Shown here: positions 5,469 to 44,600 of the stretch, piece after piece
How positions within the stretch are numbered: the stretch's first letter is position 1
Layout of the letters: every line of letters starts with the position of its first letter
Origin: Macrostomum hystrix
Lineage: Eukaryota; Animalia; Platyhelminthes
Direction of reading: 5' to 3'
DNA length: 64,000 bases
Assembly: GCA_950097015.1 (NCBI GenBank)
Contig: CATNEN010000012.1
Span: forward strand, 806,001-870,000
Notes under the pieces: model-generated
What the model was told of the DNA's origin: nothing
Seen by the model: only the letters and a program-made list of their open reading frames with translations
Database searches by the model: none
Program-made: the position numbers and the translations under genes

Positions 5469-6098
5469 GAAGCCCTTAGATTCCATGCCAATCCTGTCGC
5501 ATTTTCTCACCAAGTATTTGAAAAAACCAAAATACCCAGCTACGCGCGTCATGATTTAGACCACGCGAATTCATAAATAGCTTGCCAAGTACGAGTATGT
5601 TTAAAATTAATCGTAGATTTGTTCAATAGTTTCGAAAATATTTAATCTACTTGATATTCCCTACGTTGATTAAAACTTCTGTTACTTACGATTAGAAATG
5701 ACCGATTTATTAAGCATATAGTTGTATATTTTTACCATTTTCATACAACGAAAGAATTGGATACAAAGAATCCCTATATATTTCTGTGTTATAAACGGAT
5801 ACTTTCCTAGAACTCGTACCCGTGGAAAAGTAACTTTTCAAAGTGAGCAATAGATCTATCGTATATATAGCCACAATTTCCACAAATATCGTGTGCTCAT
5901 ACCTAAACAGAATATTCCAACATCAAAAAAAATTCTTCCGATTTTGTGACTAATTGAATAACAATATGAGTGACAAGCAGACGATTCTCATTGGAGTTGC
6001 TGGTGGAAGTTCATCAGGAAAGGTAAAGCGTATAATAGGAAATATGTTCAGTTTTGAAGCCCTTAAATGGAAGCCCTTAGATTCCATGCCAATCCTGT
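5469..6098 (+). repeat. Exact 29-bp direct repeat pair flanking UCK coding exon 1
   Basis: GAAGCCCTTAGATTCCATGCCAATCCTGT at 5469-5497 and 6070-6098; an extra partial copy TTTGAAGCCCTTA at 6053-6065. Confidence 0.9.
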
Positions 6099-9000
6099 GA
6101 GGAAAGGATGATTGGGCTCAGCCCAATCAGCCCAATTATTAACAAATATACAAATATTATTTGTTGATGATTATGTAATGCAATGTCAACTTGTGTTTCA
6201 TTGTGTATAAAATAGGTTAGTTATATTCAGTTTAATAAGTAATGGCTATGATAAGAAAGCTAATTTTAATTATTAAGCAATAGGGCATAATTTCAGTCTC
6301 CCACTCTAAATTATTTTAAAATTTAAACACATATTTAATTACCAATCAAAGGCACCCTAACAACCCAGAGGCCCCTGAGCCTAAGGAGTGAGAAGCAAGT
6401 CAAGTCACAGCAATTAGGCCTAGGTCAAATTAAAGTCACCAAGGATAATAATCTGCCATCCATTACAGGATGTTGCCAAATAGATGCTTGATGAAGACTT
6501 GGCATCACATGAATTCCTAGAGCTGCAGCTAAAATAGATGTTGCTCGTTTCATACATACATGCCACAAAATTTGGACTTGCAGAGGGTCCATATACCTTT
6601 GATTGTATTTGTGTTGTCTTCTGGGTTTTTAGGGTCCAATTGATAGGAAATTTAGTATGTGTTACAATCCATTGGGATAATTTAGAGTAGGAAACTGAAA
6701 CCTATGCCAGAAATTGATTTTTATACACTCCATAAAGAAGTATGAAGCTCTATTATAGCCAAGGGTTGAAACCTACTTTCACCAAGTGTGCTGTCCCTAC
6801 CTTACTACGTACACCAACCTCTATAAAAAATCCTGTCTTAGTGACTTTAAATGTGATTTATCAAAATGGCTCATAAGTTACTGTGTTGCATGTATCTCCT
6901 TTGCCCCTGGCCCTTTAGCCACTCTTGTTTCTAGAAAATCCTTTGACTTTAAGTTCAGGCCTATTAGTATTTGTTCACTCTCAATACTCACTAGTGACTT
7001 GCCATAGTCTGGATCATGCTGGGTGCATACCCGAATGAAGAAATGAAAATTTTCATTTGTTTGTTGACTAAGGGTCAGACAAGATCTTGATCTTGTGATT
7101 GATATTCGAGATTTTGACCATTTTCTTGATCGAAATCTTAATCAAATCTCGATTTGAAATAGTGCCAAGATTCAAGATAAAAAACATAGATTTTTACATT
7201 CAATTTTATATAAGGCACTTGTAAAATAGCAACATTTGGAGAAAATGAATGGTTATAAATTTATAAAATATGAATCACTTTTTCCTTCCCTTCTTTTCAG
7301 ATCATTAAATTTGCTTGCCAGTCAAACAAAGACAAACTAATAAAACTACACAGTATTTAAAAGGGAAATAGTTAAAAAATGAATACATTTTTGACCTTCG
7401 TTAATTTTTTTCTTTGGTCTATGAAACTTTGTTTATGTATGCAAAATCAACATCGTCTAAAATCTCGAAAATCTCAATTGAAACTTGTATCATATCGCAA
7501 AAAATATTGAATCTAAAAAATCTTGAAAATTCAATATCAGTCGGACCCCTAATGCCGATGTACACCAAAAAGTGCTTTTGCACACCGATGTATGCTAAGA
7601 ATTTTTACTATAAATTTCTAGATAGTGGCTATTTGTACATATGATAGTCCATCCCAATGGTCAATGTACATTGCATGGCATTTAAACAAAAGTTAACTGT
7701 AGTATATTGTGTAAAAGTTGGGTTCTAAATAAGATTTTAAGCTTTTTGAGATAATTAGGCTCTTAGAAGCTCGCGAAGGAAATATATATTTTATTAAAAA
7801 AATGCTGAACTTTGTTTGAATGTTTGTTTGGAGTTTGTTTGAAGCTACACAATTTTTGAAACTTTTCAATCACTTTTAGATGACAATAGGAAATTTAAGC
7901 TTTAGCGCTTAGAGAGGCTTAGTTAGACTTAGCCAACAAGTTTTTTATTTCAATTTTTTGTCTATTTATTTTTTGCCACTCTAACATTCACCCATGTGCT
8001 ACTATACGCGGACGTAGACATGACGAGAAAATAAATGCGAAGCACCTTTTTGCACAGGGAGTATGCCAATTAGAAGCTTGTGCACGCCAATATATACCAA
8101 TGGCACAAATGTACGCCCGAAATTTCTGGCGTAAACTACATGATCCAAACTATGGGTGACTTGCCCTTAGCCTCTCTGAGCACTTCTGGATTGAGGCTCA
8201 AGAAAATAGAAAGTGGTAGAGTGGACTGGAGGCTATGCCCCCACTCTGCACACCATTGCCATGCTATTGCCTTGCCACCCAGCATTTTATGGCAAGATGC
8301 ACATTTCATGTACCATGCCACCTCTAGGCTGATTGAGATTAGATATACTGTCTAGAATAAAGGAGTTGGCCACAAAAGGGCTTTGTAGAGTGATTTATGA
8401 GGACTATTCATTTAAGACTTTAAGTTTTAATCCTAATTTTGAAGGTGAGATAGAATGTTTTTAACTGAGCTTTTTTGTAGCCTAAGATCCAAATCAGACC
8501 TGACTATTTCCTAATCCTAATCATGAAGTAGTATGCTTCTCTTATGCTATAAGTTTTGCTAACTATTCACATACTACAAATAATAATCTTGAAGTTAAAT
8601 GCAATTTAAAAAATACAATCATGACAATGACAAGATATTTTAAATTGCTTATCTCTAGACCTAATATACTATCACAAGTAAAATGTTATCATTCCTTTTT
8701 ATTTTAGTCATGTATTATTTATGTTTTTGAGTCCTAGTTTGTAGTTTTAGACAAAAAATCTTGCTACTTAAGACTCTTACACAAATAAAAGCATTCTAAT
8801 GTATAAGTGGCTAAGTACTCTATAAGGTTCAAGACTGTAGGAAAGCTTACATTTAAATAATTGAGTAAACTATATTAGCTATATATTGGTACATAGGTCT
8901 GATATTGGCAGCAGTATCCTAAACTAAGTAAATAGTTAAAATCTAATGATTCTAACAAAATGTAGTTGTTTAATAACTAAGGAATTTATTCATCATTTCA

Positions 9001-12000
9001 ATAAGTAAGTGCTTATTCCCACAGTCCCGTACCAATAATCTCAATGTTATCCACATGGATCCATGCAGAAAATTTTCTGCTTATCCACACGGCAGCTTGT
9101 ATGAATAGGTCTACAACTCTTTATATATGCCAGTGCTGTTAATTTCAATTATATCCATAGGGATCCATGCCGATAATTCTCTGCTTATCCACACAGCAGA
9201 GAAGAATAAGTAGGGACTTGAAAGTAGAGAAAAATCATAGCTATCTATCTAATGAAGAAAATTGTCCAGCAAAAGCATTGGGACACTGTTTTAACTCTCA
9301 AGAATTTAATGCCTAAGTCCGAAGGACACACAATTGTAAAGATTCGCAGAGGAAAGCACGGAACTAGTTAACATGCTTTCATCAAGTTTCTGAAACCCTA
9401 TTTTTGTACTGTAACAAGTCAGTAGTATCATTTGTGCATGTGTATCATATCATATTTCAAGCGTGTGTGCAATACAAATATCAGTGCGATTTCTCATGTG
9501 ATTGTTAGTAACATTATATATTATACAAAATTAACAATTATTCGAAATTTAACATGTGCATTGCTTGTAATTAAAAGAGGCCCTACTACAGGTACTGCAG
9601 GTTCTGGATAACATTTATGGCCAGTTGTATATAGTAGCATGAAAATTGCTACATAGTTCCTGTAAAATGTGCTTCAAGTTCTTTAAGTTATTGGCAAAAC
9701 AAGCTGCCATGTGGATAGGCAGAGAATTTTGGGCATGGATCCGTGTGGAAAAAATATAAATTAATGGCACGGCATGTATAAAGAGTTGTAGACCTATTCA
9801 TACAAGCTGCCGTGTGGATACACAGATAATTATCGGCATGGATCCATGTGGATAAAATTGAAATTATCAGCACAGGACAGTGGGAATAAGCTCTGCCTTT
9901 CAATAAATCTGTGTATTAACTTTAGTAAATAAATTAATTGTTCCCCTATTTTAACTAAGATACATGTCCTGTGCATGTTAGTAATATAATATGTCAGACA
10001 AATGACCCAACCAAAAATTCATTAGTTTGAGGGAAACAATATGTAGTTGACAAAACATATATACTGCTATAGTGCTTTAAGTTCACCTAACTGTAAATTA
10101 GGTGCCAAAAACTACCTAGGATAGAACTAAGTTTTAGGTTAGTGTGGTCACCTTCACAATCCTTGGACTGAACTTAATTTGCTAAATAAATGTAATATCC
10201 AGTAGCTAACTATGCTATTTGATATATATAGAGCCTATCTGGTCAAGGATTTTTCTGTTTATCTATTGGATACAAAACCTAATTCTTAATACATAATCAT
10301 CTGCCTTGCCCTTTTGAACGATTGTAAACAATACAAAGGAAAATGTTACAATAGTACAATAGTAATACAATAGTAGTAATAGTAGTAATACAATAGTAAG
10401 TTTTTTTATCCTTAAATGATATTCTTTTCTATTAAATTGTTGCATTTAATGACTAGGCCCAATGGGGTACAAGCTATGAACAATCATAGCTAACTATAGG
10501 GAATTTTTTATCAATACAACCTTAATATACAATGTTGATTCACAATATTAGCAGTAGATTCATTATTTTTATAATAGTAAGTTGGTTTCATATATAATTA
10601 TTTTTGTCTTTTAAAGCATTTATTAACTATGAGTATTATATATTTACATAGGCAAAATTAAAATATTTTATTGATTATCATTATCTTAAAACAGTCAAAG
10701 CTCAAGAATTATGAAAAAACAATAATTCATTGTTAATTATTTCTTATATGGTTAGATTATAGTGAACTATTTATACCATTTCCAATAAAGTCTTATTTCA
10801 ACAAAATGCTGAGAACTTACCTACATTTGCTTCAAAATGGCTAGTGTCTATTTTACATTGTTTAATGACAGATATTCTATTGCAAATTAAAAGTGTAAAA
10901 TTACATATGCCTGCTTGCTTTAATGAGTGTATGTAGGACAGTGTAGCCAGTTAAGTTGCATTGCAATCAGGCTCGTCCTATTCAGTTAAATGGAGAATCA
11001 GTCATCTTTCTTTGCCCTTTTATTTAGAATTGATAATGTTATGAGGTAACAGCTTCCCACTGTGAGTATAATGCTTACAACGATGGCTGGTGCTACGATG
11101 CAAGCAAGTAACAGAAAGGGAATGTTAGTATCCTCTAATTTATCAGGTTGCATGCTCGGTTCTAGAAATCTACTTTTTTCGTTTGCAGCTCAATTTCTGA
11201 TGTGACTTATACACTGTGGCTTATACACTGACAGTGAGACTGACTTGCACCACCTCCTCCCTTTCGTTTAGATGCGAAATGCCATAGACTTTTATTGATG
11301 CCAACCCTACTTGAAACTCAATTCTATATTTAGCTTGAGATTAAGACTTATTATGATGTATATTTAACATGCCATAGAGTCTAGACTACAAAAGCAGTCC
11401 TAAAGCAGACTGTTAGTAGGAACAGTCTTATATGTGATGTTACTTGCTTTGAGAATATACAAGCATGCATCATCTGCATGTATGCATGCTTTTATATTCC
11501 TAGGCAAGGACAACTTAATAACTCAGGACCGGAAACGAGCCAATTCATGGCGAAAAAAGTATGAGGCTCGTTTAAAAGCATTGTTCTATGGCCCATCCGT
11601 ATGCGCATGCTTTCAGTTGCGAATGTATACTCGTATCATATTTGACTTTTTAATAGGCAGTCAGAAGGCGGGTGCAGGGTCGGTTTTCTTAAATGTTGAA
11701 TAGTTTTATTACATAAAAAACGTCGTGAAAATACACAATGGGAAAGCTGTACATGCAGCACATGTATAAGGAAACTCGAGAAAAATTTACGATTCTTTCT
11801 TCATCTGAACTGCAAACAGAGAGGAAAATAACAGTCACATAACGGGACAAGAGCTGACTATGATTAATAGTAAAGTGTTTGCTCCAGGTTCGCTCACTGT
11901 CCACTCAGCTTCAGTATTTTTCTATCGTGCGCTTTATCAGGCGCATCATTAATTATCATTAATTGTTAATGAATTCATGTGGCCAGGCTAAATCTGATTA

Positions 12001-15000
12001 GCAAAGCACATTTGAAAAAAGTCTTACCGTCAGTTGATTAGGCAGAGACAGTCGCCAAGCCTCTCGTTCAGTTGCATGTTTAGGAAACGAAAATACTGTA
12101 ACATTCCGATCACGGTTACTATTGTAGTTTGAACAACAGAAAATAACGCTGCATTTTCTCGGCATGATATTTAGTTTCAGCTAGCAAGAATAAAAGTTCT
12201 CTTTCTCAATTGCAAGTGCATGCGAAGAACTCAATTTTCAGCTCAGATTTCTTCGCTTTCGTAGCTTTGGATGGGCCATAGAACAATGCTTTTAAACGAG
12301 CCTCATACTTTTTTCGCCATGAATTGGCTCGTTTCCGGTCCTGAGTTATTAAGTTGTCCTTGTTCCTAGGTCGAATATAAAAGCCCGTCAGTTGCTTCTG
12401 GTTTGTGCCGTAGACTAGCCAGCATTCTCAACTCTGTGACCCAAATTAGAAGCCCGCAGTCCAAACTAGAACGCAAAAATCGATATTAAAGTAATAATAA
12501 AAACTGGTGATTGATGGTGAAGGCACAAAGGCACTGGAGAAAGACATTGACGCCCGAAATAGCCTGTCTCTATTGACATTGAAAACCACAGTGAACCAGT
12601 AGTCCATTAATGACTGCTGCCAGTGCCACCCATTTGAGACGCGGCAAAATTGGCGGTCAATAATTTAGACCATTAATGACCGCTGCTGATGTCTATGGCA
12701 AACACCATGACAGACGAATCCTAGAGGTGGGAGAGAGAAAAATTGCAGAGTGTGGAAAGAGAGCCCTCTTTGTCTATGGTCAAAATCAACACAACTCGAA
12801 TCAGAGTGATATTAAGACTGTTTTCCGCCCAGAGCGAATGGAATTTAATCTGATTTTGAACGAACCGTTTTTGAGCCTACCTACGACAGATTAAGCTGGA
12901 CGAGACATGCCCATATCCGACTGGTCTGCTTCATTTATCGCAAGGGGACATCTGTGGCCTGATGATGGAACAGATTCAACAGAGAATAGAACGAGAGGCC
13001 GAGATGGAAAGAATGACGATGGAAACCCTGCCCGAGCTAGGAATAGAGGACGTGGATGAACTTCTGAAGGTATACGAAGACTCCAAAACGTAGTGCAGAT
13101 TTGGCCAGATTATCCAATGTCATCAGCAGTATTGGTTCTGAGGTCGACGAAGTTCAGGCACTGTCCGTAGCGGCACCGTTGCAAAAACTGGTGCCGAATC
13201 AAGTGACGGCACCGGGCGTCAAGTGGAAAACTGACTATCTACCTATTGCGACGTTATTCCTGTTACTATAATACATTTTCATGCAGAGAGTATCCGTAAT
13301 GGTGGTCCTCATTTGCCGCCTATATTTGTCTGTGTTTATGCCATGTTTATTACACAATCAAAAGTGCAAATATATATGTCAGAAACGCGTTGACTGCTTC
13401 CTCACGCAGAGAAAAGACAACTTTTTGCCATAGACAAAACGTGAGTCGCAGAATTCATTAATGACCGCTAAGAGCGGTTTTCAATGTAATGTAAGAATGA
13501 CTTGATTCAGATTCAGTGTTATTATATTACCTCCTGGTTGGGATTTTTGTGAGTAATAAGTACCGACATAAATTAATTAATTGGAGTACTGAAATTTGCC
13601 ATGCCGATTACTAGCAATTGTATGGGTAGTTTATAACTATATATTATAACTTCCCAGTTTCAATTATGTGCTAAAATGTCGAAAATTATATTTCTAAATC
13701 TACCTATAAAATGTTATATAGGCTAAAATTAACGTCGTTTACTCGTTAAATGTAAAAAAATATTTTTTTCAATACTATTTGTACTCAATAAAAACTCAAT
13801 TTTGAGTCGATTCTTACTAAAAAGTCCATCTCGCACACCACAGCGCAAACTGTGCAAAAAACAACTATAAAATGACTGATGAAAATTGGCCTTCAATAGC
13901 GATTTGATGGCTATAAGATGTATGACGGTGAAAGTTTAAAAACACAAATAACATAAAAAATCCTTCTCAACACTCTGGAATTAAGTGCGTTATTAAAACG
14001 TATGTTAGTATAGGCTGTCTAATACCCTGGTCGGTTAGAGAAAGCTTTTCAATGTCATTATAAGTTAGCAGAAGGATAAACTGCGTATCTCAGTGAAATT
14101 AGATTCCCTTCTCATCTTGAACTACCACACCGCAGACTTCGGTGTGCGAGCGCATAATGCAGCAGATTTCTGGGCCGCCGCACCTGCCTAGCCGTGTTGA
14201 CATTATTAGTATGAGCTCTTTTTATCGGCGGCTGACTGACAGTGAGCTGGAGGCTGCGCACGCTGGGTTGTTCAATTTCGACCATCCTGGTGAGTTACAA
14301 CTTTTACCGCTTCACCAGCATAGTCTATGGCATTCAGCCTGGAACAATAGACAGAAAATCTTCCGCGAGTCATTCTGGTGTTGTTTATATTGTCACTTTC
14401 CATTTTGAGGGATTGTGGAACCTTAGTTGTCAGCTTTTTATAAGCATTTTGCTTCCGCCTGGATTGATCAAATACCTATTGCCCATACTGCCTAGACACC
14501 TCAAATCTCTATTGCCCATACTGCCTAGACACCTCAAATCTCTATTGCCCATACTGCCTAGACACCTCAAATCTCTATTGCCCATACTGCCTAGACACCT
14601 CAAATCTCTATTGCCCATAGCTGCCTAGACACCTCAAATCTCTATTGCCCATGCTGCCTAGACACCTCAAATCTCTATTGCCCATACTGCCTAGACACCT
14701 CAAATCTCTATTGCCCATGCTGCCTAGACACCTCAAATCTCTATTGCCCATGCTGCCTAGACACCTCAAATCTCTATTGCCCATACTGCCTAGACACCTC
14801 AAATCTCTATTGCCCATGCTGCCTAGACACCTCAAATCTCTATTGCCCATGCTGCCTAGACACCTCAAATCTCTATTGCCCATGCTGCCTAGACACCTCA
14901 AATCTCTATTGCCCATACTGCCTAGACACCTCAAATCTCTATTGCCCATGCTGCCTAGACACCTCAAATCTCTATTGCCCATACTGCCTAGACACCTCAA

Positions 15001-18000
15001 ATCTCTATTGCCCATGCTGCCTAGACACCTCAAATCTCTATTGCCCATACTGCCTAGACAGTTCCAGTGTTGCCATCACAGCGATTTTTGTTATAAATTA
15101 TTATTATTTGTTTGACTAGGCTAGTAATGAAGTCGGTGACTTATTACGGGATGATTGAGCCGTGATGCGTATCAAAGTATGCAGCAAGTGCTTCAAAGCT
15201 TAACCAATACAATGTATCCGATATGTATCGAAAGGTCTCTGTCTTTCTCACTGGCTCATATATAATACTCACTCACTGTCTCTCTCTCACTAAGGAGATA
15301 GAGACTGTGAGGGCGATTTTCGATGAAGCCCGGAAGGCGATTCTCAATGAGGCTAGGATGCTTCGATTGTCTGGGATTCAAGTGCGATTTCTACCGACCA
15401 AGAAACAAGAAGGAGTGAACTGAAGACTGAAATATTGAACTGAACAGATTGAAAAGAAAAGACTGAACAGCGCAGTCATTAGAAACATACAAGCGCTCAA
15501 GTGCGAGACGAGCTGCTGAGAATTCAAGCTGGCCCGGTTGCACAGAACAGTTTATTTGCAAAACGAATTTTTTACGTTGGCATAAATGAACGAAACATTT
15601 CAATTAACGACAAACATATTATCGGATCTGCCAAGTCAACCGAAGTCAACTTCATTGCGTTCGGAGCTGAGCTAGCTACCAATGGCCGGTGCCTCCCTCA
15701 CCGCTGGTCCCATATATCCTCTTGCATCCCTCTTCCAGCTCATCCTCTACGGGATCCGCCCTGTTCTTGCTCATCTCCCACTGCACTATCTGCCCCCTTC
15801 CAGCTCGTTCCCCAAAGGACCGTCTTCTTCCAGACATTCAGTTTCGACGCTTCTGGCTTGCCATTGTGCCATTGAGGAACATTTAGGGCAACTAAAAGCA
15901 TGACGAAATTGAAGCCCCAAACGCGTAGTTTTTTTAAATGTGTAGAGCAAACAAACAATATTCAACATTTGAAAACAAAAACAAATACTGACTGAATAAA
16001 GCCAGAGACAAAAAGTAAAAATTTCTTGGAATTTTAGCGAATGTGCATGGCCTTCCTAAAGTAGAGGACAAACAGGTTAAAGATAAATATTGGTGGACAG
16101 CAAAAACAGCGGAGCCGTCAAGTGTCAAGCATTGAGAAGGGAAAACAATGGAACTGGCTAAGGCCCGCCAATCAAGGTATGACAGTGATGAAACATTGCT
16201 CAATGCTAATAACTTGGTTATAAGGGTTTGAATCAAGGACTTCTATAAATAGCATCTGGACTGGAAGCTCCCCAACCCCCCCCTTACCTCTGGAGGCCAC
16301 TCCATATTATGCTTTTCTTTTGCTTTTCTCTCATTTCTGGCTCTCTGAAACCCATATTGAACGGACGTCACAACCTGCACTGATAAGTGATTTAATAGCA
16401 TTAGCATGCAAAACATTTATTTCATTCCAAACAATAGCTATAATTACACAAAATTTGCACTTCAAAAAGAATAAAATACGTAAAAAGTAATGAATTGGCA
16501 TTCATGTGAAAAAGCAAGACATGATAACGGCTTCTAAAAAATCACGCAATTTAAAAACGACTATTCGTGCTAATGATGGCATTTCGTGCTAAGTTTAAAA
16601 GGATTGATCTATCGGAAAAGTCAGCTGCTTCTGGAGTCAATTCATTGCGGTTCAATTCATTCAGCCAGCTGTTATCAAGGAGAAGATTATCCAGAAAGTG
16701 GACTTTAAGAGCTCTGCCATTCAACTCCCGCTTGATGAAATAATGGTGGGTTCCGAAGCGAAGGACCTGCAATGGTCCAATGGTCCCAGTGCCAGACCGC
16801 AACTATTCGCCTTCAAGCAGGTGTACGTCAGCCTGGCTATGTACTTAAAGACGCATTTGCCGTCCGCCTCAAGGATTTTGAGGAGCCTGACGTTTTTAGA
16901 TACGTCCCTTCCCATTGACGAAAAAAGTGTTCTTTATGTAGCTAACAGCCTGCCGAAGGTCATTCCACCCACTTTTTTATTTACTTACAACACTTTATAC
17001 TTTGACTGACCAGTGACTGGCTTTTGCTGACGAAAAGTTAATCAAATAATTTTTCATTATTCCTTTTAAGTTTCTAAATCTTTTGGTTGACATTGACAAT
17101 AAATATAAAGGCAGAACACAATTAGTGCACAATACGCTGATTAGTGAGCTTCAAAATTAGCAGCGATTTTTTTAGTTCCCTGCGATTTTTTCGACCCAAG
17201 TATCGGTGGCAACACTGCTATACTCCTCAAATCCCTATTGCCCAAACTGCCTAGACACCTCAAATCCCTATTGCCCAAACTGCCTAGACACCTCAAATCC
17301 CTATTGCCCACACTGCCTAGACTCCTCAAATCCCTATTGCCCACACTGCCTAGACTCCTCAAATCCCTATTGCCCCACACTGCCTAGACACCTCAAATCC
17401 CTATTGCCCCACACTGCCTAGACTCCTCAAATCCCTATTGCCCCACACTGCCTAGACTCCTCAAATCCCTATTGCCCCACACTGCCTAGACTCCTCAAAT
17501 CTCTATTGCCCCACACTGCCTAGACTCCTCAAATCCCTATTGCCCCACACTGCCTAGACACCTCAAATCCCTATTGCCCCACACTGCCTAGACTCCTCAA
17601 ATCCCTATTGCCCCACACTGCCTAGACTCCTCAAATCCCTATTGCCCCACACTGCCTAGACTCCTCAAATCCCTATTGCCCCACACTGCCTAGACACCTC
17701 AAATCCCTATTGCCCCACACTGCCTAGACTCCTCAAATCCCTATTGCCCCACACTGCCTAGACTCCTCAAATCCCTATTGCCCCACACTGCCTAGACTCC
17801 TCAAATCTCTATTGCCCCACACTGCCTAGACTCCTCAAATCCATATTGCCCCACACTGCCTAGACACCTCAAATCCCTATTGCCCCACACTGCCTAGACT
17901 CCTCAAATCCCTATTGCCCCACACTGCCTAGACTCCTCAAATCCCTATTGCCCCACACTGCCTAGACTCCTCAAATCCCTATTGCCCCACACTGCCTAGA

Positions 18001-19396
18001 CACCTCAAATCCCTATTGCCCCACACTGCCTAGACTCCTCAAATCCCTATTGCCCCACACTGCCTAGACACCTCAAATCCCTATTGCCCCACACTGCCTA
18101 GACTCCTCAAATCCCTATTGCCCCACACTGCCTAGACACCTCAAATCCCTATTGCCCCACACTGCCTAGACTCCTCAAATCCCTATTGCCCCACACTGCC
18201 TAGACTCCTCAAATCCCTATTGCCCCACACTGCCTAGACTCCTCAAATCCGTATTGCCCATATTCCCTAGACTCCTCAAATACCTATCACTTTAATCCCG
18301 AGGCTCTTAAGATCCCTATTGTTCACAATCCCTAGGCTCTTAAGATCCCTATTGTTCACAATCCCTTCGCTCTCTAGATCCCTATTGTTAAAGCTCACCA
18401 GACTCCCTAAATCACATTTCTCCACTATACCGACTCCTCAAATCCCTATTAATTGTCCATAATCCCCAGAATCGTCGAATCCCTATTCCGCTATCCCGAC
18501 TCTTCAAATCCCAATCGTCCGTGCTCCCCAGACTCATTGGATCCCCATCTGTCTTCCCATTAGACGCATTCGATTTCGATCTAATGCTGGCCACCCTGCG
18601 TGACGTCCGATGCGGCAGTCCGGTCCGAGTTCCCGAATACGACCCCGCTTTGAGCACGGCGCAGCCGGAACGGCACCGGGATCTGGCTATGGTGGATGTG
18701 CTCCTGGTGGAAGGCATCCTGCTATTCTATCTGCCCCAGCTGCGGGACCTGTTCGATGTCAAACTGTTTGTCGACTGCGACTCGGACACGCGTCTAGCCA
18801 GGCGAGTGACATTTTCTAATACAGTGCCCGAAATGACGAATAGCATTTTCAAAATAAGAATGTCATTTTTAAGTTCGAATGACATTTTAAAAAATCGAAT
18901 GATATTTAAAAAATTGTAATGACAAAATGTCAATTAAAAAATACGAATGACAATGTCCGTAATCAGACAGGCATTGTTCAAATCAAGGGTCAAATTTCAT
19001 TAAAACCTAAATTATATTTGAAGTCTTGAAAAACGAATCTCAGAATATCAGAAGTGCAGCGAACAAAGACTGCTGAGTGACATAATCCAGCGGCCTATGA
19101 CTTGCAGGCGAGTTCGGACGGACCTGGCCAGGGATCGCAGCCTGGTGTCCATCCTCAGCTACTATTCCGAGTTTGTCAAGCCGGGCTTCGAGGCCTTCTG
19201 CCTGCCAACCAAGAAGTACGCCGACCTGGTGCTGCCGCGCGGACCGGATAACACCGTGGCCGTCGAGCTCATGGCGCCGCACATCAGGGACTTCATGGCC
19301 GAGGCCACCCGTCAGAGCAACGGCACTTCGGGCTGCGGACAGGCCACCGAGCTGGCCGCCGCGGTGCAGCCGCCTCACGTGTCTCGGCCGCACTGA
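5966..19396 (+). CDS. UCK: Uridine-cytidine kinase homologue, 245 aa, divergent active site
   Basis: Exons 5966-6022 (MSDKQTILIGVAGGSSSGK, P-loop), 14136-14289 (TSVCERIM...SMSSFYRRLT...FNFDHP), 18564-18801 (DAFDFDLM...VEGILLFY...KLFVDCDSDTRLAR), 19108-19396 (RVRTD...FVKPGFEAFCLPTKKYADLVLPRGPDNTVAVELM...stop). Total 738 nt, phases 0,1,2 consistent; third intron is GC-AG. Confidence 0.92.
9011..9891. mobile_element. Foldback/MITE-like element with ~190-bp diverged inverted arms
   Basis: 9011-9199 (GCTTATTCCCACAGT...TTATCCACACAGCAG) is the reverse complement, with scattered mismatches, of 9703-9891. Each arm has two GGATCCATG/TTATCCACA subrepeats. No TSD seen. Confidence 0.7.
11488..12384. mobile_element. 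MITE-like element with ~110-bp near-perfect inverted arms
   Basis: 11505-11598 (CAAGGACAACTTAATAACTCAGG...GGCCCATCC) matches the reverse complement of 12269-12362; outer ends differ by small indels. ~670-bp spacer; no TSD seen. Confidence 0.75.
12576..13487. mobile_element. Degenerate TIR element
   Basis: 12-bp perfect inverted termini ACATTGAAAACC (12576-12587) / GGTTTTCAATGT (13476-13487); inverted subterminal GTCTATGGCAAA / TTTGCCATAGAC; CATTAATGAC at both ends. Confidence 0.5.
14476..15060. repeat. 33-bp minisatellite (~18 copies), UCK intron 2
   Basis: CTGCCTAGACACCTCAAATCTCTATTGCCCAT(A/G). Confidence 0.97.
15065..17217. mobile_element. Decayed cut-and-paste DNA transposon, probably hAT-like
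   Basis: 11-bp TIRs CAGTGTTGCCA (15065-15075) and TGGCAACACTG (17207-17217), subterminal GCGATTTT motifs, interrupted ORF fragments inside. No 8-bp TSD visible. Confidence 0.65.
16640..17009 (+). pseudogene. Transposase relic (hAT-like C-terminal half)
   Basis: Frame reads QFIQPAVIKEKIIQKVDFKSSAIQLPLDEIMVGSEAKDL...YLKTHLPSASRILRSLTFLD...VANSLPKVIP. It resembles, from memory, the C-terminal region of hAT-related transposases; the rest of the element has stops and frameshifts. Confidence 0.5.
17218..18290. repeat. 34-bp minisatellite (~31 copies), same family as 14476-15060
   Basis: CTGCCTAGA(C/A)TCCTCAAATCCCTATTGCCCCACA-type units; degenerate copies continue toward the exon-3 acceptor at 18563. 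Confidence 0.97.
18802..19107 (+). other. GC-AG intron of UCK
   Basis: AG|GCGAGT donor and TTGCAG|G acceptor form the only canonical-type pair that keeps the RLARRVRTD frame. Confidence 0.8.
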
Positions 19397-19435
19397 CCCC
19401 GGCCTAGAGTTTGACACTTGATTGGACACAGCTGG

Positions 19436-21718
19436 CTTTTTAGTCTTGCTGTGAAAAAAAACAGGTGGGTTTTGAGGCTCGGAGTGAAGAACAGGTGGTT
19501 TTAGAGACGCGGTGTGAAGAACAGGTGGATTTTGAGGCTCGGTGTAAAAAACAGGTGGATTTTGAGGCTCGGTGTGAAGAACAGGTGGATTTTGAGGCTC
19601 GGTGTGAAGAACAGGTGGCTTTTTAGTCTTGCTGTGAAAAAAACAGGTGGGTTTTGAGGCTCGGTGTGAAGAACAGGTGGATTTTGAGGCTCGGTGTGAA
19701 GAACAGGTGGGTTTTGAGGCTCGGTGTAAAGAACAGGTGGGTTTTGAGGCTCGGAGTGAAGAACAGGTGGTTTTAGAGACGCGGTGTGAAGAACAGGTGG
19801 ATTTTGAGGCTCGGTGTGAAGAACAGGTGGATTTTGAGGCTCGGTGTGAAGAACAGGTGGGTTTTGAGGCTGGGTGTGAAGAACAGGTGGATTTTGAGGC
19901 TCGGTGTAAAAAACAGGTGGATTTTGAGGCTTGGTGTGAAGAACAGGTGGATTTTGAGGCTCGGTGTGAAGAACAGGTGGCTTTTTAGTCTTGCTGTGAA
20001 AAAAACAGGTGGGTTTTGAGGCTGGGTGTGAAGAACAGTTGGATTTTGAGGCTGTTTGTGAAGAACAGGTGGGTTTTGAGGCTGGGTGTGAAGAACAGGT
20101 GGGTTTTGAGGCTGGGTGTGAAGAACAGGTGGGTTTTGAGTCTGGGTGTGAAGAACAGGTGGGTTTTGAGGCTGGGTGTGAAGAACAGGTGGGTTTTGAG
20201 GCTGGGTGTGAAGAACAGGTGGGTTTTGAGGCTCGGTGTGAAGAACAGGTAGGTTTTGAGGCTGGGTGTGAAGAACAGGTGGGTTTTGAGGCTGGGTGTG
20301 AAGAACAGGTGGGTTTTGAGGCTGGGTGTGAAGAACAGGTGGGTTTTGAGGCTGGGTGTGAAGAACAGGTGGGTTTTGAGGCTCGGTGTGAAGAACAGGT
20401 AGGTTTTGAGGCTGGGTGTGAAGAACAGGTGGGTTTTGAGGCTGGGTGTGAAGAACAGGTGGGTTTTGAGGCTCGGTGTGAAGAACAGGTGGGTTTTGAG
20501 GCTGGGTGTGAAGAACAGGTGGATTTTGAGGCTCGGTGTAAAAAACAGGTGGATTTTGAGGCTCGGTGTGAAGAACAGGTGGGTTTTGAGGCTCGGAGTG
20601 AAGAACAGGTGGTTTTAGAGACGCGGTGTGAAGAACAGGTGGATTTTGAGGCTCGGTGTAAAAAACAGGTGGATTTTGAGGCTCGGTGTGAAGAACAGGT
20701 GGGTTTTGAGGCTCGGAGTGAAGAACAGGTGGTTTTAGAGACGCGGTGTGAAGAACAGGAGGATTTTGAGGCTCGGTGTAAAAAACAGGTGGATTTTGAG
20801 GCTCGGTGTGAAGAACAGGTGGATTTTGAGGCTCGGTGTGAAGAACAGGTGGCTTTTTAGTCTTGCTGTGAAAAAAACAGGTGGGTTTTGAGGCTCGGTG
20901 TGAAGAACAGGTGGGTTTTGAGGCTCGGTGTGAAGAACAGGTGGCTTTTTAGTCTTGCTGTGAAAAAAACAGGTGGGTTTTGAGGCTCGGTGTGAAGAAC
21001 AGGTGGATTTTGAGGCTCGGTGTGAAGAACAGGTGGGTTTTGAGGCTCGGAGTGAAGAACAGGTGGTTTTAGAGACGCGGTGTGAAGAACAGGAGGATTT
21101 TGAGGCTCGGTGTAAAAAACAGGTGGATTTTGAGGCTCGGTGTGAAGAACAGGTGGGTTTTGAGGCTCGGAGTGAAGAACAGGTGGTTTTAGAGACGCGG
21201 TGTGAAGAACAGGAGGATTTTGAGGCTCGGTGTAAAAAACAGGTGGATTTTGAGGCTCGGTGTGAAGAACAGGTGGATTTTGAGGCTCGGTGTGAAGAAC
21301 AGGTGGCTTTTTAGTCTTGCTGTGAAAAAAACAGGTGGGTTTTGAGGCTCGGTGTGAAGAACAGGTGGGTTTTGAGGCTCGGTGTGAAGAACAGGTGGGT
21401 TTTAAAGCTCGGAGTGAAGAACAGGTGGTTTTAGAGACGCGGTGTGAAGAACAGGTGGCTTTTGAGGCTCGGTGTAAAAAACAGGTGGATTTTGAGGCCC
21501 GGTGTGAAGAACAGGTGGGTTTTGAGGCTCGGAGTGAAGAACAGGTGGTTTTAGAGACGCGGTGTGAAGAACAGGTGGATTTTGAGGCTCGGTGTGAAGA
21601 ACAGGTGGATTTTGAGGCTCGGTGTGAAGAACAGGTGGGTTTTGAGGCTGGGTGTGAAGAACAGGTGGGTTTTGAGGCTGGGTGTGAAGAACAGGTGGGT
21701 TTTGAGGCTCGGTGTGAA
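19436..21718. repeat. 30-bp minisatellite (~75 copies) starting ~40 bp after the UCK stop
   Basis: GAAGAACAGGTGG(G/A)TTTTGAGGCTCGGTGT, with a recurrent variant GGCTTTTTAGTCTTGCTGTGAAAAAAACAG. Confidence 0.97.
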
Positions 21719-22289
21719 GGCTTATTTTATCAATATTTAACTGCATTATCTACACCGATCTCGCTTCTCAATCTCTGATGTTTTAGCACTGTCAAGTCAA
21801 TAATAAATTTTATTAAAGCAAATTTACATTTCACGCTGCCAATACCTGCTGAAAAAACTTTTTTTCAAATTTTCCTACTTTTTTAACCACCGTGCAATAC
21901 TACTAAGGCTCCTTCAGTAGTGCCTGCGTTTTCAGCGTCTTGTTGGATTTTTACTGGCGTTTTTTAACTTATCATGCTTTGATGTGCTCACATAGATTGC
22001 CTTTCAGTAGAGCATTTCAATCGGTGCAATCGGTTTCATTTTTAGATGCTCACACAAGTAACAGTAATTGTCATAAAGGTTGATAGCTTTTTGGTTGTGA
22101 AACTAAATGACTTAACAAATAAACGGTTCTACTCTGTTTTGATTTTGAACGCTAAAAATGAAGTGCTCTGTAAGGGCTGCTGTTGAGTCTCCATAATTGA
22201 GACACGCCTTGTGGCCTTATTTCTTTCTGTGCTCGCTTCTGTACGCATTATTGCTCTTTGTTTCTGGTCAACAGCCTTCACTTGCAACT

Positions 22290-23330
22290 TATTTACTCCA
22301 ATCCATCTCTCTCCAATCCACCTCTCTCCAATCCACCCCTCTCCAATCCACCTCTCTCCAATCCACCCCTCTCCAATCCACCTCTCTCCAATCCACCTCT
22401 CTATTATCCACCTCTCTCGAATCCATCTCTCTCCAATCCACCTCTCTCCAATCCACCCCTCTCCAATCCATCTCTCTCCAATCCACCTCTCTCCAATCCA
22501 CCTCTCTCCAATCCACCTCTCTCCAATCCACCTCTCTCCAATCCATCTCTCTCCAATGCACCTGTCTCCAATCCACCTCTCTCCAATCCACCTCTCTCCA
22601 ATCCACCTCTCTATTATCCACCTCTCTCGAATCCACCTCTCTCGAATCCATCTCTCTCCAATCCACCTCTCTCCAATCCACCTCTCTCCAATCCACCTCT
22701 CTCCAATCCACCTCTCTCCAATCCACCTCTCTCCAATCCACCTCTCTCCAATCCACGTGTCTCCAATCCACCTGTCTCTAATTCACCTGTCTCCAATCCA
22801 CCTCTCTCTAATTCACCTGTCTCCAATCCACCTCTCTCCAATCCATCTCTCTCCAATCCATCTCTCTCCAATCCACCTCTCTCCAATCCACCTCTCTCCA
22901 ATCCACCTCTCTCCAATCCACCTGTCTCTAATTCACCTGTCTCCAATCCACCTGTCTCTAATTCACCTGTCTCCAATCCACCTCTCTCTAATTCACCTGT
23001 CTCCAATCCACCTCTCTCTAATTCACCTGTCTCCAATCCACCCCTCTCCAATCCACCTCTCTCCAATCCACCTCTCTATTATCCACCTCTCTCGAATCCA
23101 TCTCTCTCCAATCCACCTCTCTCCAATCCATCTCTCTCCAATGCACCTGTCTCCAACCCACCTCTCTCTAATTCACCTGTCTCCAATCCACCTCTCTCTA
23201 ATCCACCTCTCTCTAATCCACCTCTCTCTAATCCACCTCTCTCTAATTCACCTGTCTCCAATCCACCTCTCTCTAATTCACCTGTCTCCAACCCACCTCT
23301 TTCTAATTCACCTGTCTCCAATCCACCTCT
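22290..23330. repeat. 15-bp minisatellite (~69 copies)
   Basis: CCACCTCTCTCCAAT and variants. Confidence 0.97.
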
Positions 23331-42400: not shown

Positions 42401-44600
42401 GTGAGCAGAGAGTGGAGAGTTGTTGGTGAGCAGAGTGGGAGAGTTGTTCGTGAGCAGAGGGGGGAGAGTTGTTGGTGAGCAGAGTGGGAGAGTTGTTGGT
42501 GAGCAGAGTGGGAGAGTTGTTGGTGAGCAGAGTGGGAGAGTTGTTGGTGAGCAGAGGGGGAGAGTTGTTGGTGAGCAGAGTGGGAGAGTTGTTGGTGAGC
42601 AGAGTGGGAGAGTTGTTGGTGAGCAGAGTGGGAGAGTTGTTGGTGAGCAGAGGGGGGAGAGTTGTTGGTGAGCAGAGGGGGAGAGTTGTTGGTGAGCAGA
42701 GTGGGGAGAGTTGTTGGTGAGCAGAGGGGGGAGAGTTGTTGGTGAGCAGAGTGGGGAGTTGTTGGTGAGCAGAGAGTGGAGAGTTGTTGGTGAGCAGAGG
42801 GGGAGAGTTGTTGGTGAGCAGAGGGGGAGAGTTGTTGGTGAGCAGAGTGGGAGAGTTGTTGGTGAGCAGAGTGGGAGAGTTGTTCGTGAGCAGAGGGGGG
42901 AGAGTTGTTGGTGAGCAGAGTGGGAGAGTTGTTGGTGAGCAGAGAGTGAGAGTTGTTGGTGAGCAGAGGGGGAGAGTTGTTGGTGAGCAGAGTGGGAGAG
43001 TTGTTCGGTGAGCAGAGGGGGGAGAGTTGTTGGTGAGCAGAGTGGGAGAGTTGTTGGTGAGCAGAGTGGGGAGAGTTGTTGGTGAGCAGAGTGGGAGAGT
43101 TGTTGGTGAGCAGAGTGGGAGAGTTGTTGGTGAGCAGAGTGGGAGAGTTGTTGGTGAGCAGAGGGGGGAGAGTTGTTGGTGAGCAGAGTGGGAGTTGTTG
43201 GTGAGCAGAGAGTGAGAGTTGTTGGTGAGCAGAGGGGGAGAGTTGTTGGTGAGCAGAGGGGGAGAGTTGTTGGTGAGCAGAGTGGGAGAGTTGTTGGTGA
43301 GCAGAGTGGGAGAGTTGTTGGTGAGCAGAGGGGAGTTGTTCGTGAGCAGAGGGGGAGAGTTGTTGGTGAGCAGAGTGGGAGAGTTGTTGGTGAGCAGAGT
43401 GGGAGAGTTGTTGGTGAGCAGAGGGGGGAGAGTTGTTGGTGAGCAGAGTGGGAGAGTTGTTGGTGAGCAGAGAGTGAGAGTTGTTGGTGAGCAGAGGGGG
43501 AGAGTTTTTGGTGAGCAGAGTGGGAGAGTTGTTCGTGAGCAGAGGGGGGAGAGTTGTTGGTGAGCAGAGTGGGAGAGTTGTTGGTGAGCAGAGTGGGAGA
43601 GTTGTTGGTGAGCAGAGTGGGAGAGTTGTTGGTGAGCAGAGGTGAGAGTTGTTGGTGAGCAGAGTGGGAGAGTTGTTGGTGAGCAGAGGGGGAGAGTTGT
43701 TGGTGAGCAGAGTGGGAGTTGTTGGTGAGCAGAGAGTGGAGAGGTTGTTCGGTGAGCAGAGGGGGGAGAGTTGTTGGTGAGCAGAGTGGGAGAGTTGTTG
43801 GTGAGCAGAGTGTAAGAGTTGTTCGTGAGCAGAGTGGGAGAGTTGTTCGTGAGAGAGTGGGAGAGTTGTTCGTGAGCAGAGGGGGGAGAGTTGTTGGTGA
43901 GCAGAGTGGGAGAGTTGTTGGTGAGCAGAGAGTGAGAGTTGTTGGTGAGCAGAGGGGGAGAGTTTTTGGTGAGCAGAGTGGGAGAGTTGTTCGTGAGCAG
44001 AGGGGGGAGAGTTGTTGGTGAGCAGAGTGGGAGAGTTGTTGGTGAGCAGAGTGTCAGAGTTGTTCGTGAGCAGAGGGGGAGAGTTGTTGGTGAGCAGAGT
44101 GGGAGAGTTGTTGGTGAGCAGAGTGGGAGAGTTGTTGGTGAGCAGAGGGGGAGAGTTGTTGGTGAGCAGAGTGGGAGAGTTGTTGGTGAGCAGAGTGGGA
44201 GAGTTGTTGGTGAGCAGAGTGGGAGAGTTGTTGGTGAGCAGAGTGGGAGAGTTGTTGGTGAGCAGAGTGTCAGAGTTGTTCGTGAGCAGAGGGGGAGAGT
44301 TGTTGGTGAGCAGAGTGGGAGAGTTGTTGGTGAGCAGAGGGGGAGAGTTGTTGGTGAGCAGAGTGGGAGAGTTGTTGGTGAGCAGAGTAGGAGAGTTGTT
44401 GGTGAGCAGAGTGGGAGAGTTGTTGGTGAGCAGAGTGGGAGAGTTGTTGGTGAGCAGAGTGGGAGAGTTGTTCGTGAGCAGAGTGGGAGAGTTGTTGGTA
44501 GGAAGAGTGGGAGAGTTGTTGGTGAGCAGAGAGTGAGAGTTGTTGGTGAGCAGAGGGGGAGAGTTTTTGGTGAGCAGAGTGGGAGAGTTGTTGGTGGGCA
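39415..44600. repeat. 24-bp satellite (~215 copies, 5.2 kb)
   Basis: GAGCAGAGTGGGAGAGTTGTTGGT with 22- and 25-bp indel variants; source of the 1458-aa and 1032-aa ORFs. Confidence 0.98.

What the first reader, a model, noticed from the sequence alone, without database searches (positions are those of the whole stretch)
14136..18700. UCK homologue lacking the catalytic base and the pyrimidine-recognition His: candidate pseudo-kinase or re-specified enzyme
Seen: the UCK motif S-Q-D-S-F-Y reads S-M-S-S-F-Y (Ser codon AGC at 14214-14216, two base changes from GAC, so not one sequencing error). The P-x-Y-D-F-x-x-H motif reads PEYDPALS (Ser at 18653-18655). Established: in human UCK2, Asp62 is the general base for the 5'-OH and His117 recognises the pyrimidine; the residue at this site sets uridine/cytidine specificity in Thermus ttCK. 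The P-loop (GGSSSGKTS), EGIL and PTKKYAD..PRG motifs remain intact in an open spliced frame. Inference: an ATP-binding, catalytically dead regulator (UCKs are tetramers) or an enzyme with a new substrate.
Basis: partly seen in the sequence, partly recalled or inferred. Interest (0 to 1): 0.72.

Follow-up and report, generated by a model that had tools for sequence, protein, structure and literature searches.

The report
Flatworm uridine kinase without catalytic aspartate
This Macrostomum flatworm gene is an expressed, well-conserved copy of the nucleotide-salvage enzyme uridine-cytidine kinase. It has a serine where the essential catalytic aspartate should be, and every flatworm version examined, including those of blood flukes, liver flukes and tapeworms, also lacks that aspartate, so the gene probably no longer does the job its name implies.

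Summary
A four-exon gene (5966-19396, + strand) encodes a UCK1/2-type protein that reads S-M-S-S-F-Y where UCK2 has S-Q-D-S-F-Y, and P-E-Y-D-P-A-L-S in the base-binding hairpin.

Spliced RNA-type contigs from two studies confirm the exon 2/3 and 3/4 joins, including a GC-AG intron. It is not an error or a decaying gene:
- The same AGC codon sits in the paralogue on another chromosome and in Macrostomum lignano.
- dN/dS against M. lignano is about 0.16.

The genome has no canonical UCK1/2-type gene. Two UCKL1-type genes (kinase plus UPRT) keep the Asp.

New here: about 25 other flatworm orthologues (flukes, schistosomes, tapeworms, a monogenean) also lack Asp62 (Ser, Tyr or Lys). They form one clade with Macrostomum in the best tree, though with weak support.

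In flatworms the 17 active-site positions are no more conserved than the rest of the protein. In canonical UCKs they are far more conserved.

Best reading (about 0.55): an ancient flatworm protein that still binds nucleotide but has lost canonical kinase activity. Main rival: a re-specified or weak enzyme. The His117 argument is weak, because Asn is the commonest residue there in animal UCKs. No biochemistry was possible.

The parts
5966..6022 (+). Exon 1: start codon and Walker A P-loop up to Lys33 (MSDKQTILIGVAGGSSSGK), followed by a GT donor at 6023
   Evidence: It matches the N-termini of Macrostomum proteins P0002/P0004. The X2 contig carries 255 letters upstream of exon 3, which equals exon 2 + exon 1 + about 45 nt (inferred from length only).
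14136..14289 (+). Exon 2: TSVCERIM...SMSSFY...FNFDHP. The last G is the first base of a split Asp codon.
   Evidence: AG acceptor at 14134-5 and GT donor at 14290. Its 3' end appears as the loose end of spliced contigs X2, X6 and X9.
14214..14216 (+). AGC Ser codon at the position of the UCK2 catalytic base and Mg ligand Asp62
   Evidence: The same AGC is found in the paralogue L004, the M. lignano orthologue L008 and transcript L009.
18564..18801 (+). Exon 3: AFDFD...PEYDPALS hairpin...VEGIL...FVDCDSDTRLA plus 2 bases of a split Arg codon
   Evidence: PF00485, 40 bits. Covered by spliced contigs from runs X2, X6, X9 and X10.
18632..18655 (+). Base-binding hairpin P-E-Y-D-P-A-L-S: Tyr112 is kept, the aromatic residue 114 is Pro, and the His/Asn117 column is Ser
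18710..18712 (+). GAA Glu at the position of Mg ligand Glu135 (kept here; Lys in the M. lignano orthologue)
18802..19107 (+). Intron 3, a GC-AG intron (AG|GCGAGT ... TTGCAG|G), 306 nt
   Evidence: joint 18798->19105 skipping 306 letters, with 9 ambiguous letters, in X2, X6 and X10. Only the GC-AG placement has near-canonical ends. M. lignano has a GT donor at the same codon position.
19108..19396 (+). Exon 4 coding part: (R)RVRTDLARDRS...FVKP...PTKKYADLVLPRG...VSRPH, stop TGA at 19394-19396. The 3' UTR runs at least to 19440.
   Evidence: (PF00485, 29.8 bits)
19118..19120 (+). ACG Thr at the column of lid Arg169 (Arg in 128/128 other UCKs); an Arg sits one position earlier

Best explanation
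The locus is a real, transcribed four-exon gene for the flatworm orthologue of animal uridine-cytidine kinase 1/2. Shown: the catalytic base and Mg ligand Asp62 is Ser, the stacking aromatic 114 is Pro, and the invariant lid Arg169 is Thr. The UCK2 fold, P-loop Lys33, ribose ligands Asp84/Arg166, Tyr65, Arg174/Arg176 and the C-terminal ...SRPH are kept. The Ser state is shared by both Macrostomum paralogue groups and by trematode and basal cestode orthologues (Tyr in cyclophyllid tapeworms, Lys in a monogenean). Inferred: the Asp was lost once, early in rhabditophoran flatworm evolution. Since then the protein has been kept by purifying selection for a role that does not need canonical uridine/cytidine 5'-phosphorylation. 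The most likely role is a phosphate- or nucleotide-binding, non-catalytic (scaffold or sensor) protein. Real uridine/cytidine kinase activity would then come from the UCKL1-type kinase-UPRT genes, which keep the full catalytic set.
For: Gene reality:
- Spliced contigs from two studies of the same organism, and from a close relative, carry the exon 3/4 join and the exon 2 end.
- The three variants seen are two synonymous changes and one in the 3' UTR.

Selection:
- Window gene against its M. lignano orthologue: pooled NG86 over 239 codons gives dN 0.15, dS 0.92, omega 0.16.
- Second paralogue group (own-genome copy against another Macrostomum species): omega about 0.11, with synonymous sites saturated.

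Not an error: AGC at the Asp62 codon is present in four independent Macrostomum genes.

Rarity of the change: the Asp62 column is D125/E2/V1 in 128 other UCKs.

Role of Asp62: it is the general base and a Mg ligand, and UCK2 D62A is catalytically dead in cells (PMC9163393, PMC7718876). The homologous Asp is also the base in phosphoribulokinase, which belongs to the same Pfam family (PMC9978339).

Flatworm-wide pattern:
- About 25 named flatworm orthologues lack an acidic residue there.
- All 15 flatworm rows form one clade in the best ML tree.

Relaxed catalytic constraint:
- Mean column entropy of 17 active-site positions is 0.40 against 0.96 for the core in canonical UCKs. In flatworms it is 1.04 against 1.08.
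- Different lineages have lost different further residues: Glu135->Lys in M. lignano group A, Arg174->Gln in group B, Walker A Ser34->Ala/Val/Gly/Asn in parasites, and Arg166->Lys in Neodermata.

Fold intact: the AF2 model of the M. lignano orthologue has pLDDT 86 and matches UCK2 with target-normalised TM 0.91 and rmsd 1.9 A.

A back-up enzyme exists: two UCKL1-type loci with SMDSYY, one with the full YDFTTHSR, have UPRT exons directly downstream.

Precedents: the UCK-like dead kinase domain of S. pombe Tad2 has a structural role (PMC8217354), and UCK2 D62A keeps a kinase-independent function.
Against: - No activity or binding data exist. 'Dead' is inferred from residues.
- Ser at the 62 column is itself conserved from Macrostomum to flukes and basal tapeworms, and Lys33, Glu135 (in most lineages), Tyr65 and Arg176 are kept. 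That could mean a working but altered active site rather than a dead one.
- Schistosomes incorporate cytidine efficiently, and the literature attributes this to UCK (PMC6128611). I could not check that parasitic flatworms have a UCKL1-type enzyme to account for it.
- The single-origin claim rests on a weakly supported node (35/33). The two flatworm clades sit on long stems, so long-branch attraction is possible.
- The AF2 model was made for the M. lignano orthologue, not the window protein. I had no coordinates with which to look for a substitute base.
Confidence: 0.55

Rival explanations
1. A re-specified or weakened enzyme. The protein still binds Mg-ATP and transfers phosphate, but uses different chemistry or a different acceptor. 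One option is an acceptor that needs no general base, such as a phosphate group of a nucleotide. Another is a slow, cytidine-biased nucleoside kinase. In either case Ser62 would be a selected ligand contact.
For: - Ser is conserved at the 62 column across Macrostomum, trematodes and basal cestodes instead of drifting.
- In the window protein the P-loop GK[T], Glu135, Asp84, Arg166, Arg174 and Arg176 are all intact.
- A new Arg sits next to the lost Arg169 in all Macrostomum copies.
- In Thermus ttCK, Ser or Thr at the His117-equivalent position keeps cytidine activity and weak uridine activity (PMC5614712).
- Schistosomes use cytidine well.
Against: - In flatworms as a group, active-site positions are no better conserved than the rest of the protein.
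- The Walker A Ser/Thr, Glu135, Arg166, Arg169 and Arg174 are each lost in some lineages. That is unexpected for a conserved catalytic function.
- The base-stacking aromatic 114 is replaced by Pro, Cys or Lys.
- No kinase in the PF00485 family is known to me to work without the Asp (my own knowledge).
Confidence: 0.3
2. An ordinary uridine-cytidine kinase. Catalysis proceeds normally because a water molecule, the substrate or another residue replaces Asp62, so the database name 'UCK2' is right.
For: - About 50% identity to canonical UCKs, a UCK2-like predicted fold and Pfam PRK above cut-off.
- Purifying selection.
- Cytidine salvage is reported in schistosomes.
Against: - UCK2 D62A is inactive in cells.
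- The column is acidic in 127 of 128 other UCKs.
- Arg169, invariant elsewhere, is also lost, and active-site constraint is relaxed.
- The only Macrostomum-specific conserved acidic gain is Asp at the Val57 column. It lies five residues up the same strand, at the far end from the active site (the geometry is my inference).
Confidence: 0.1
3. An assembly or sequencing error, or a decaying pseudogene.
Against: - The same AGC codon is present in the paralogue and in two other Macrostomum species.
- The frame is intact and the transcript is spliced.
- Omega is 0.16.
- The state is shared across the phylum.
Confidence: 0.01

Closest known systems
Human uridine-cytidine kinase 2 and 1 (UCK2, UCK1; PDB 1UEJ, 1UDW, 2JEO)
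   Same: Same family and fold. Exons align over UCK2 residues 35-241 (E 1e-4 to 5e-20). The orthologue model superposes with target-normalised TM 0.91. Also shared are the P-loop, FNFDHP, EGIL, DxDxRLxRR, PTKKYAD..PRG and the C-terminal SRPH.
   Different: Asp62->Ser, Phe114->Pro, His117->Ser, Arg169->Thr, Gln184->Tyr, Pro128->Met, and a one-residue insertion in the hairpin.
UCKL1-type kinase-UPRT fusion proteins (two loci in this genome: C29 at 7.65 Mb and C38 at 6.62 Mb)
   Same: Same kinase domain family. Both share Met at position 61 (S-M-x-S-x-Y).
   Different: The UCKL1-type genes keep Asp62, the aromatic 114 and Glu135 (C29 also His117; C38 has Asn there). The lid arginines Arg166/169/174/176 were readable only at the C38 locus and are kept there. 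Both carry UPRTase exons downstream. The window gene has no UPRT part.
Engineered UCK2 D62A
   Same: Loss of the same carboxylate. The mutant is catalytically dead yet still binds and stabilises EGFR, so a kinase-independent function of this fold exists (PMC7718876).
   Different: It is a laboratory mutant of a human enzyme. Here the loss is natural, ancient and accompanied by other active-site changes. No link to EGFR is implied.
N-terminal UCK-like domain of Schizosaccharomyces pombe Tad2 (PDB 7EEY)
   Same: A UCK-fold domain that has lost key UCK2 residues (His117, Arg166, Arg169, Arg176, Gln184). It is not a kinase, binds sulfate at the phosphate site and serves a structural role (PMC8217354). 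It appears among the sequence and fold matches.
   Different: It is only about 22-24% identical, is fused to a deaminase and is confined to fission yeasts. The flatworm protein stands alone, is about 50% identical to active UCKs and keeps Arg166 (in Macrostomum) and Arg176.
Thermus thermophilus cytidine kinase ttCK (PDB 3ASY/3ASZ)
   Same: A natural UCK with a non-His residue at the His117 column, which restricts it to cytidine. Ser or Thr there gives weak uridine activity (PMC5614712).
   Different: ttCK keeps the catalytic Asp and is a fully active kinase.

Membership tests
Uridine-cytidine kinase (EC 2.7.1.48; Pfam PF00485 PRK, UCK1/2 type) | Match to PF00485 above the gathering score | tested here: met
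   Exon 3 scores 40 bits and exon 4 scores 29.8 bits against a cut-off of 22. The own-genome scan finds the same exons.
Uridine-cytidine kinase (EC 2.7.1.48; Pfam PF00485 PRK, UCK1/2 type) | Walker A P-loop GxxxxGK[ST] | tested here: met
   GGSSSGK|TS spans the exon 1/2 join.
Uridine-cytidine kinase (EC 2.7.1.48; Pfam PF00485 PRK, UCK1/2 type) | Catalytic base and Mg ligand Asp62 (acidic in 127/128 homologues) | tested here: not met
   Ser (AGC 14214-16).
Uridine-cytidine kinase (EC 2.7.1.48; Pfam PF00485 PRK, UCK1/2 type) | Mg ligand Glu135 (EGIL) | tested here: met
   VEGIL, GAA at 18710-12. The M. lignano orthologue has Lys here.
Uridine-cytidine kinase (EC 2.7.1.48; Pfam PF00485 PRK, UCK1/2 type) | Ribose ligands Asp84 and Arg166 | tested here: met
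   FNFDHP and RLARR|V.
Uridine-cytidine kinase (EC 2.7.1.48; Pfam PF00485 PRK, UCK1/2 type) | Base pocket: Tyr112, aromatic 114, and His or Asn at 117 | tested here: not met
   Tyr112 is present. Position 114 is Pro (Tyr or Phe in 124/128). Position 117 is Ser (Asn or His in 118/128).
Uridine-cytidine kinase (EC 2.7.1.48; Pfam PF00485 PRK, UCK1/2 type) | Lid arginines Arg169, Arg174 and Arg176 | tested here: not met
   Arg169 is Thr (Arg in 128/128), with an Arg one position earlier. Arg174 and Arg176 are kept.
Uridine-cytidine kinase (EC 2.7.1.48; Pfam PF00485 PRK, UCK1/2 type) | UCK2-like three-dimensional fold | tested here: met
   Tested on the M. lignano orthologue P0002 only: pLDDT 86, Foldseek E 4e-28, target-normalised TM 0.91 against 6N54/1UEJ. 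The joined window protein was not folded.
Uridine-cytidine kinase (EC 2.7.1.48; Pfam PF00485 PRK, UCK1/2 type) | ATP-dependent phosphorylation of uridine and cytidine | not testable with these tools
   This needs a recombinant enzyme assay.
Pseudoenzyme derived from UCK (non-catalytic homologue kept by selection) | Loss of one or more residues essential for catalysis | tested here: met
   Asp62 and Arg169 are lost. D62A is dead in human UCK2.
Pseudoenzyme derived from UCK (non-catalytic homologue kept by selection) | Purifying selection and expression (so not a pseudogene) | tested here: met
   Omega is 0.16 and about 0.11. Spliced contigs come from two studies.
Pseudoenzyme derived from UCK (non-catalytic homologue kept by selection) | Relaxed constraint on catalytic positions relative to the rest of the protein | tested here: met
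   Active-site entropy against core entropy is 1.04 against 1.08 in flatworms and 0.40 against 0.96 in canonical UCKs.
Pseudoenzyme derived from UCK (non-catalytic homologue kept by selection) | Demonstrated absence of enzymatic activity | not testable with these tools
   No assay was possible. This is the decisive open point.

The most novel reading that the evidence does not exclude
Flatworms as a phylum converted their only UCK1/2 gene, more than half a billion years ago (a date from my own knowledge of flatworm divergence, not computed here), into a protein without the catalytic aspartate, and they have kept it ever since. On this reading the 'uridine-cytidine kinase 2' annotated in schistosomes, liver flukes and tapeworms is not the enzyme that salvages uridine and cytidine. 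It would have a conserved kinase-independent function, or a new Ser62-dependent chemistry. It would be a natural counterpart of the non-catalytic role seen for human UCK2 D62A.
Probability: 0.45. Interest if true: 0.7.

Novelty: new variant of a known kind. Interest (0 to 1): 0.58.

Why it matters
Uridine-cytidine kinase is the rate-limiting pyrimidine salvage enzyme. It is also the activator of many uridine and cytidine analogues, both drugs and labelling reagents such as 5-ethynyluridine.

If the flatworm UCK1/2 orthologue is not a working kinase, three things follow:
- Metabolic reconstructions and drug-target lists for schistosomes, flukes and tapeworms that count 'UCK2' as the salvage kinase need revising. 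The UCKL1-type enzyme becomes the relevant one.
- Analogue activation and RNA labelling in Macrostomum, a regeneration and stem-cell model, would depend on a different gene than assumed.
- The protein would be a rare, ancient, phylum-wide pseudoenzyme derived from a housekeeping nucleoside kinase. That gives a natural system for asking what UCK proteins do apart from catalysis.

I found no paper describing this in the searchable library.

Tried and rejected
- **Sequencing error or pseudogene:** rejected by codon identity across four genes, dN/dS and spliced contigs.
- **GT donor at 18806:** rejected. It would shift exon 4 into a frame that stops after about 50 codons, and the contigs show the 306-nt skip that fits GC-AG.
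- **A hidden canonical UCK1/2 gene in the genome:** not found. Neither PF00485 nor a canonical Lingula UCK used as query found one. Only four loci turned up.
- **A compensating acidic residue:** the only Macrostomum-wide acidic gain lies at the Val57 column, at the wrong end of the strand.
- **'Confined to Macrostomum':** this was my working view, and I gave it up after the representative search and cluster names.
- **Unknown Logan proteins P0012/P0015** (canonical, nearest neighbours in the first tree): I tried to identify them from their contigs, but only run accessions came back and no organism. P0307/P0309 turned out to group with corals.
- **Earlier findings of the scan:** nothing about this gene.
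- **Steps not run:**
  - The four exons were never joined into one protein for any search or fold. Exons were searched one by one by reference, and the fold used the M. lignano orthologue.

Full report
**What is in the window**

The region holds a four-exon gene on the + strand.
- Exon 1 (5966-6022) encodes the start and the P-loop up to Lys (MSDKQTILIGVAGGSSSGK) and ends at a GT donor.
- Exon 2 (14136-14289) starts after an AG and reads TSVCERIM...SMSSFY...FNFDHP.
- Exon 3 (18564-18801) reads AFDFD...PEYDPALS...VEGIL...FVDCDSDTRLA.
- Exon 4 (19108-19396) reads RVRTDLARDRS...FVKP...PTKKYADLVLPRG...VSRPH, then the stop.

Exons 3 and 4 match Pfam PF00485 above its cut-off. All three larger exons align to human UCK2 and UCK1 in the PDB. 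I never joined them into one protein for a search or a fold. That joined step was left out.

The codon at 14214-14216 is AGC. It aligns, with no gap nearby, to Asp62 of UCK2. The hairpin reads P-E-Y-D-P-A-L-S, so the His117 column is Ser, or Thr if the one-residue insertion is placed differently.

- Phe/Tyr114 is Pro.
- The lid Arg169, which is Arg in 128 of 128 other UCKs, is Thr, with an Arg one position earlier.
- Gln184 is Tyr.
- Pro128 is Met.

- Met at position 61 is the normal UCKL1 state.
- His117 is not general. Asn is the commonest residue in that column in 128 mostly animal UCKs (N 92, H 26).

Asp62 is established as the general base and a Mg ligand. His117/Tyr112 read the base, and H117Y abolishes uridine use (PMC9163393, PMC5614712). 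UCK2 D62A is catalytically dead in cells (PMC7718876).

**The gene is real and expressed**

Contigs from runs in two studies of the same organism hold only the exonic 62% of the sampled words. Laid on 18540-19440, they skip 306 letters between 18798 and 19105, with 9 ambiguous letters. That fits only a GC-AG intron (AG|GCGAGT...CAG|G) and keeps the frame. The same contigs continue upstream of 18563 with the last letters of exon 2.

M. lignano has an intron at the same codon position with a normal GT donor. The variants seen are two synonymous Leu changes and one 3' UTR change. Position 14214 itself was not displayed from reads.

**It is not an error and not decaying**

The closest proteins are from Macrostomum lignano (77% identity over exon 3), so the genome is another Macrostomum species.

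M. lignano has two groups of this gene. Group A is the window gene's orthologue and group B is the second paralogue group. Both read SMSSFY. The window's own genome has a group B paralogue on another chromosome (C38 at 12.74 Mb) with SMSSFY and YDKATNQ. All four genes use AGC at this codon.

Exon-by-exon NG86 against the M. lignano orthologue gives dN 0.15, dS 0.92 and omega 0.16 over 239 codons. Group B gives about 0.11, with synonymous sites saturated.

**What else the genome has**

Scans with PF00485 and with a canonical UCK protein find only four loci: the two Ser62 genes and two UCKL1-type genes. The UCKL1-type genes read SMDSYY (C29 with YDFTTHSR; C38 with YDFASNAR and all four lid arginines, whose exon I could not read at C29) and have UPRTase exons directly downstream. 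So a complete uridine/cytidine kinase active site exists in this animal, but not in the UCK1/2-type genes.

**The trait is flatworm-wide**

A profile search of 1.84 billion cluster representatives found one Macrostomum-type cluster (391 bits) and then ordinary UCKs (283 bits and below). Among the 146 best representatives with a residue at that column, 16 have a non-acidic residue at the Asp62 position. Looking up their names showed that these include liver flukes, a monogenean, the orthonectid Intoshia, the C. elegans protein Q17413 and some early-branching fungi.

A word search seeded with the Opisthorchis protein then listed the named flatworm orthologues:
- Trematodes (Opisthorchis, Clonorchis, Paragonimus, Calicophoron, Fasciolopsis, Fasciola, Echinostoma, Trichobilharzia, Heterobilharzia, four Schistosoma species) have Ser.
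- Basal cestodes (Mesocestoides, Schistocephalus, Dibothriocephalus) have Ser.
- Cyclophyllid tapeworms (Echinococcus, Anoplocephala, Hymenolepis) have Tyr.
- The monogenean has Lys.

None has Asp or Glu.

In a bootstrap tree the parasite clade (100/99) and the Macrostomum clade (100/99) are each solid. All 15 flatworm rows form one clade in the best tree, but with weak support (35/33), and both clades sit on long stems. A single early loss of the Asp is therefore the simplest reading, but it is not proven.

**What the protein most likely does**

Shown:
- The fold is intact (orthologue model pLDDT 86, target-normalised TM 0.91 to UCK2).
- Lys33, Tyr65 and Arg176 are invariant in all flatworms.
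- In canonical UCKs the 17 active-site positions are much more conserved than the core (entropy 0.40 against 0.96). In flatworms they are not (1.04 against 1.08).
- Different lineages have lost different further catalytic residues:
  - Glu135->Lys and Tyr185->His in M. lignano group A
  - Arg174->Gln in group B
  - Walker A Ser34->Ala/Val in Schistosoma, Gly in Opisthorchis, Asn in cyclophyllids
  - Arg166->Lys in all parasites

Inferred: selection keeps the protein but no longer keeps the uridine/cytidine phosphotransfer machinery. The protein would then be a nucleotide- or phosphate-binding protein with a non-catalytic role, while the UCKL1-type enzymes do the salvage. Precedents are the dead UCK-like domain of S. 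pombe Tad2 (PMC8217354) and the kinase-independent action of UCK2 D62A.

**The main rival**

Ser at the 62 column is conserved rather than drifting, and the window protein in particular still has Thr34, Glu135, Asp84, Arg166, Arg174 and Arg176. An altered enzyme is therefore a live option. It could be a slow cytidine-biased kinase, or a kinase for an acceptor that needs no general base. This is more plausible in Macrostomum than in the parasites.

Schistosomes incorporate cytidine well, and the literature credits UCK (PMC6128611). I could not check whether the parasites have a UCKL1-type gene to explain this. I put the pseudoenzyme reading at about 0.55, an altered enzyme at about 0.30, a normal kinase at about 0.10 and an artefact at about 0.01.

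**Novelty and verdict**

The family is known, and pseudoenzymes are a known kind. In the searchable library I found no description of flatworm UCK1/2 lacking its catalytic Asp. Public records name these proteins uridine-cytidine kinase 2.

Its interpretation is partly supported, and the finding extends from one gene to a phylum. Only biochemistry can decide between a dead and a re-specified protein.

Noticed in passing
window 11998-12165 (-), inside intron 1 of the gene: A short ORF with a THAP zinc-finger domain (PF05485, E 2.7e-5, 25.3 bits against a cut-off of 23.9). It is probably a remnant of a P-element or THAP-type transposon in the 8.1-kb first intron.
   Followed up: partly
window 14468-15060 and 17212-18287 (intron 2); 19460-21719 and 22296-23330 (just 3' of the gene): Large minisatellite arrays: 33 bp x 18 and 34 bp x 32 with related units inside intron 2, then 30 bp x 75 starting about 65 bp after the stop codon, and 15 bp x 69. 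They produce long spurious ORFs in all frames.
   Followed up: partly
window 18802-19107 compared with L008:13179: Intron 3 uses a GC donor (AG|GCGAGT) in this species. The M. lignano orthologue has a GT donor (AG|GTTTGG) at the same codon position, so the donor differs between two congeneric species.
   Followed up: yes
P0285/P0198 (C. elegans Q17413, 'Probable uridine-cytidine kinase'); P0220 (Intoshia linei); P0187, P0246, P0205 (fungi Bifiguratus, Basidiobolus, Blastocladiella): UCK-family proteins outside flatworms that also lack an acidic residue at the Asp62 column (His, Ser, Gln, Thr), often with other catalytic residues changed. In all, 16 of 146 diverse cluster representatives do so, so Asp-less UCK homologues have arisen repeatedly.
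   Followed up: partly
P0002 and its M. lignano variants (group A orthologue of the window gene): M. lignano group A has Lys at the Mg ligand Glu135 (VKGILLFY) and His at the otherwise invariant Tyr185. The window species keeps Glu and Tyr at these positions, so M. lignano group A has lost two more catalytic-site residues.
   Followed up: partly
G000:C38:6623298-6626432 (L002/L003) and G000:C29:7650342-7654180 (L001/L007): Two UCKL1-type kinase-UPRT genes. The C38 copy has Asn instead of His at the 117 column and lies next to a very long 15-codon tandem repeat array. Two further stand-alone UPRTase loci lie at C32:546749 and C38:15479971.
   Followed up: partly
window 40001-44000: A stretch with extreme G-over-C skew (GC skew about 0.82, GC 54-55%) coinciding with a 1458-codon open frame on the minus strand (40372-44748). 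This is probably another repeat array.
   Followed up: no
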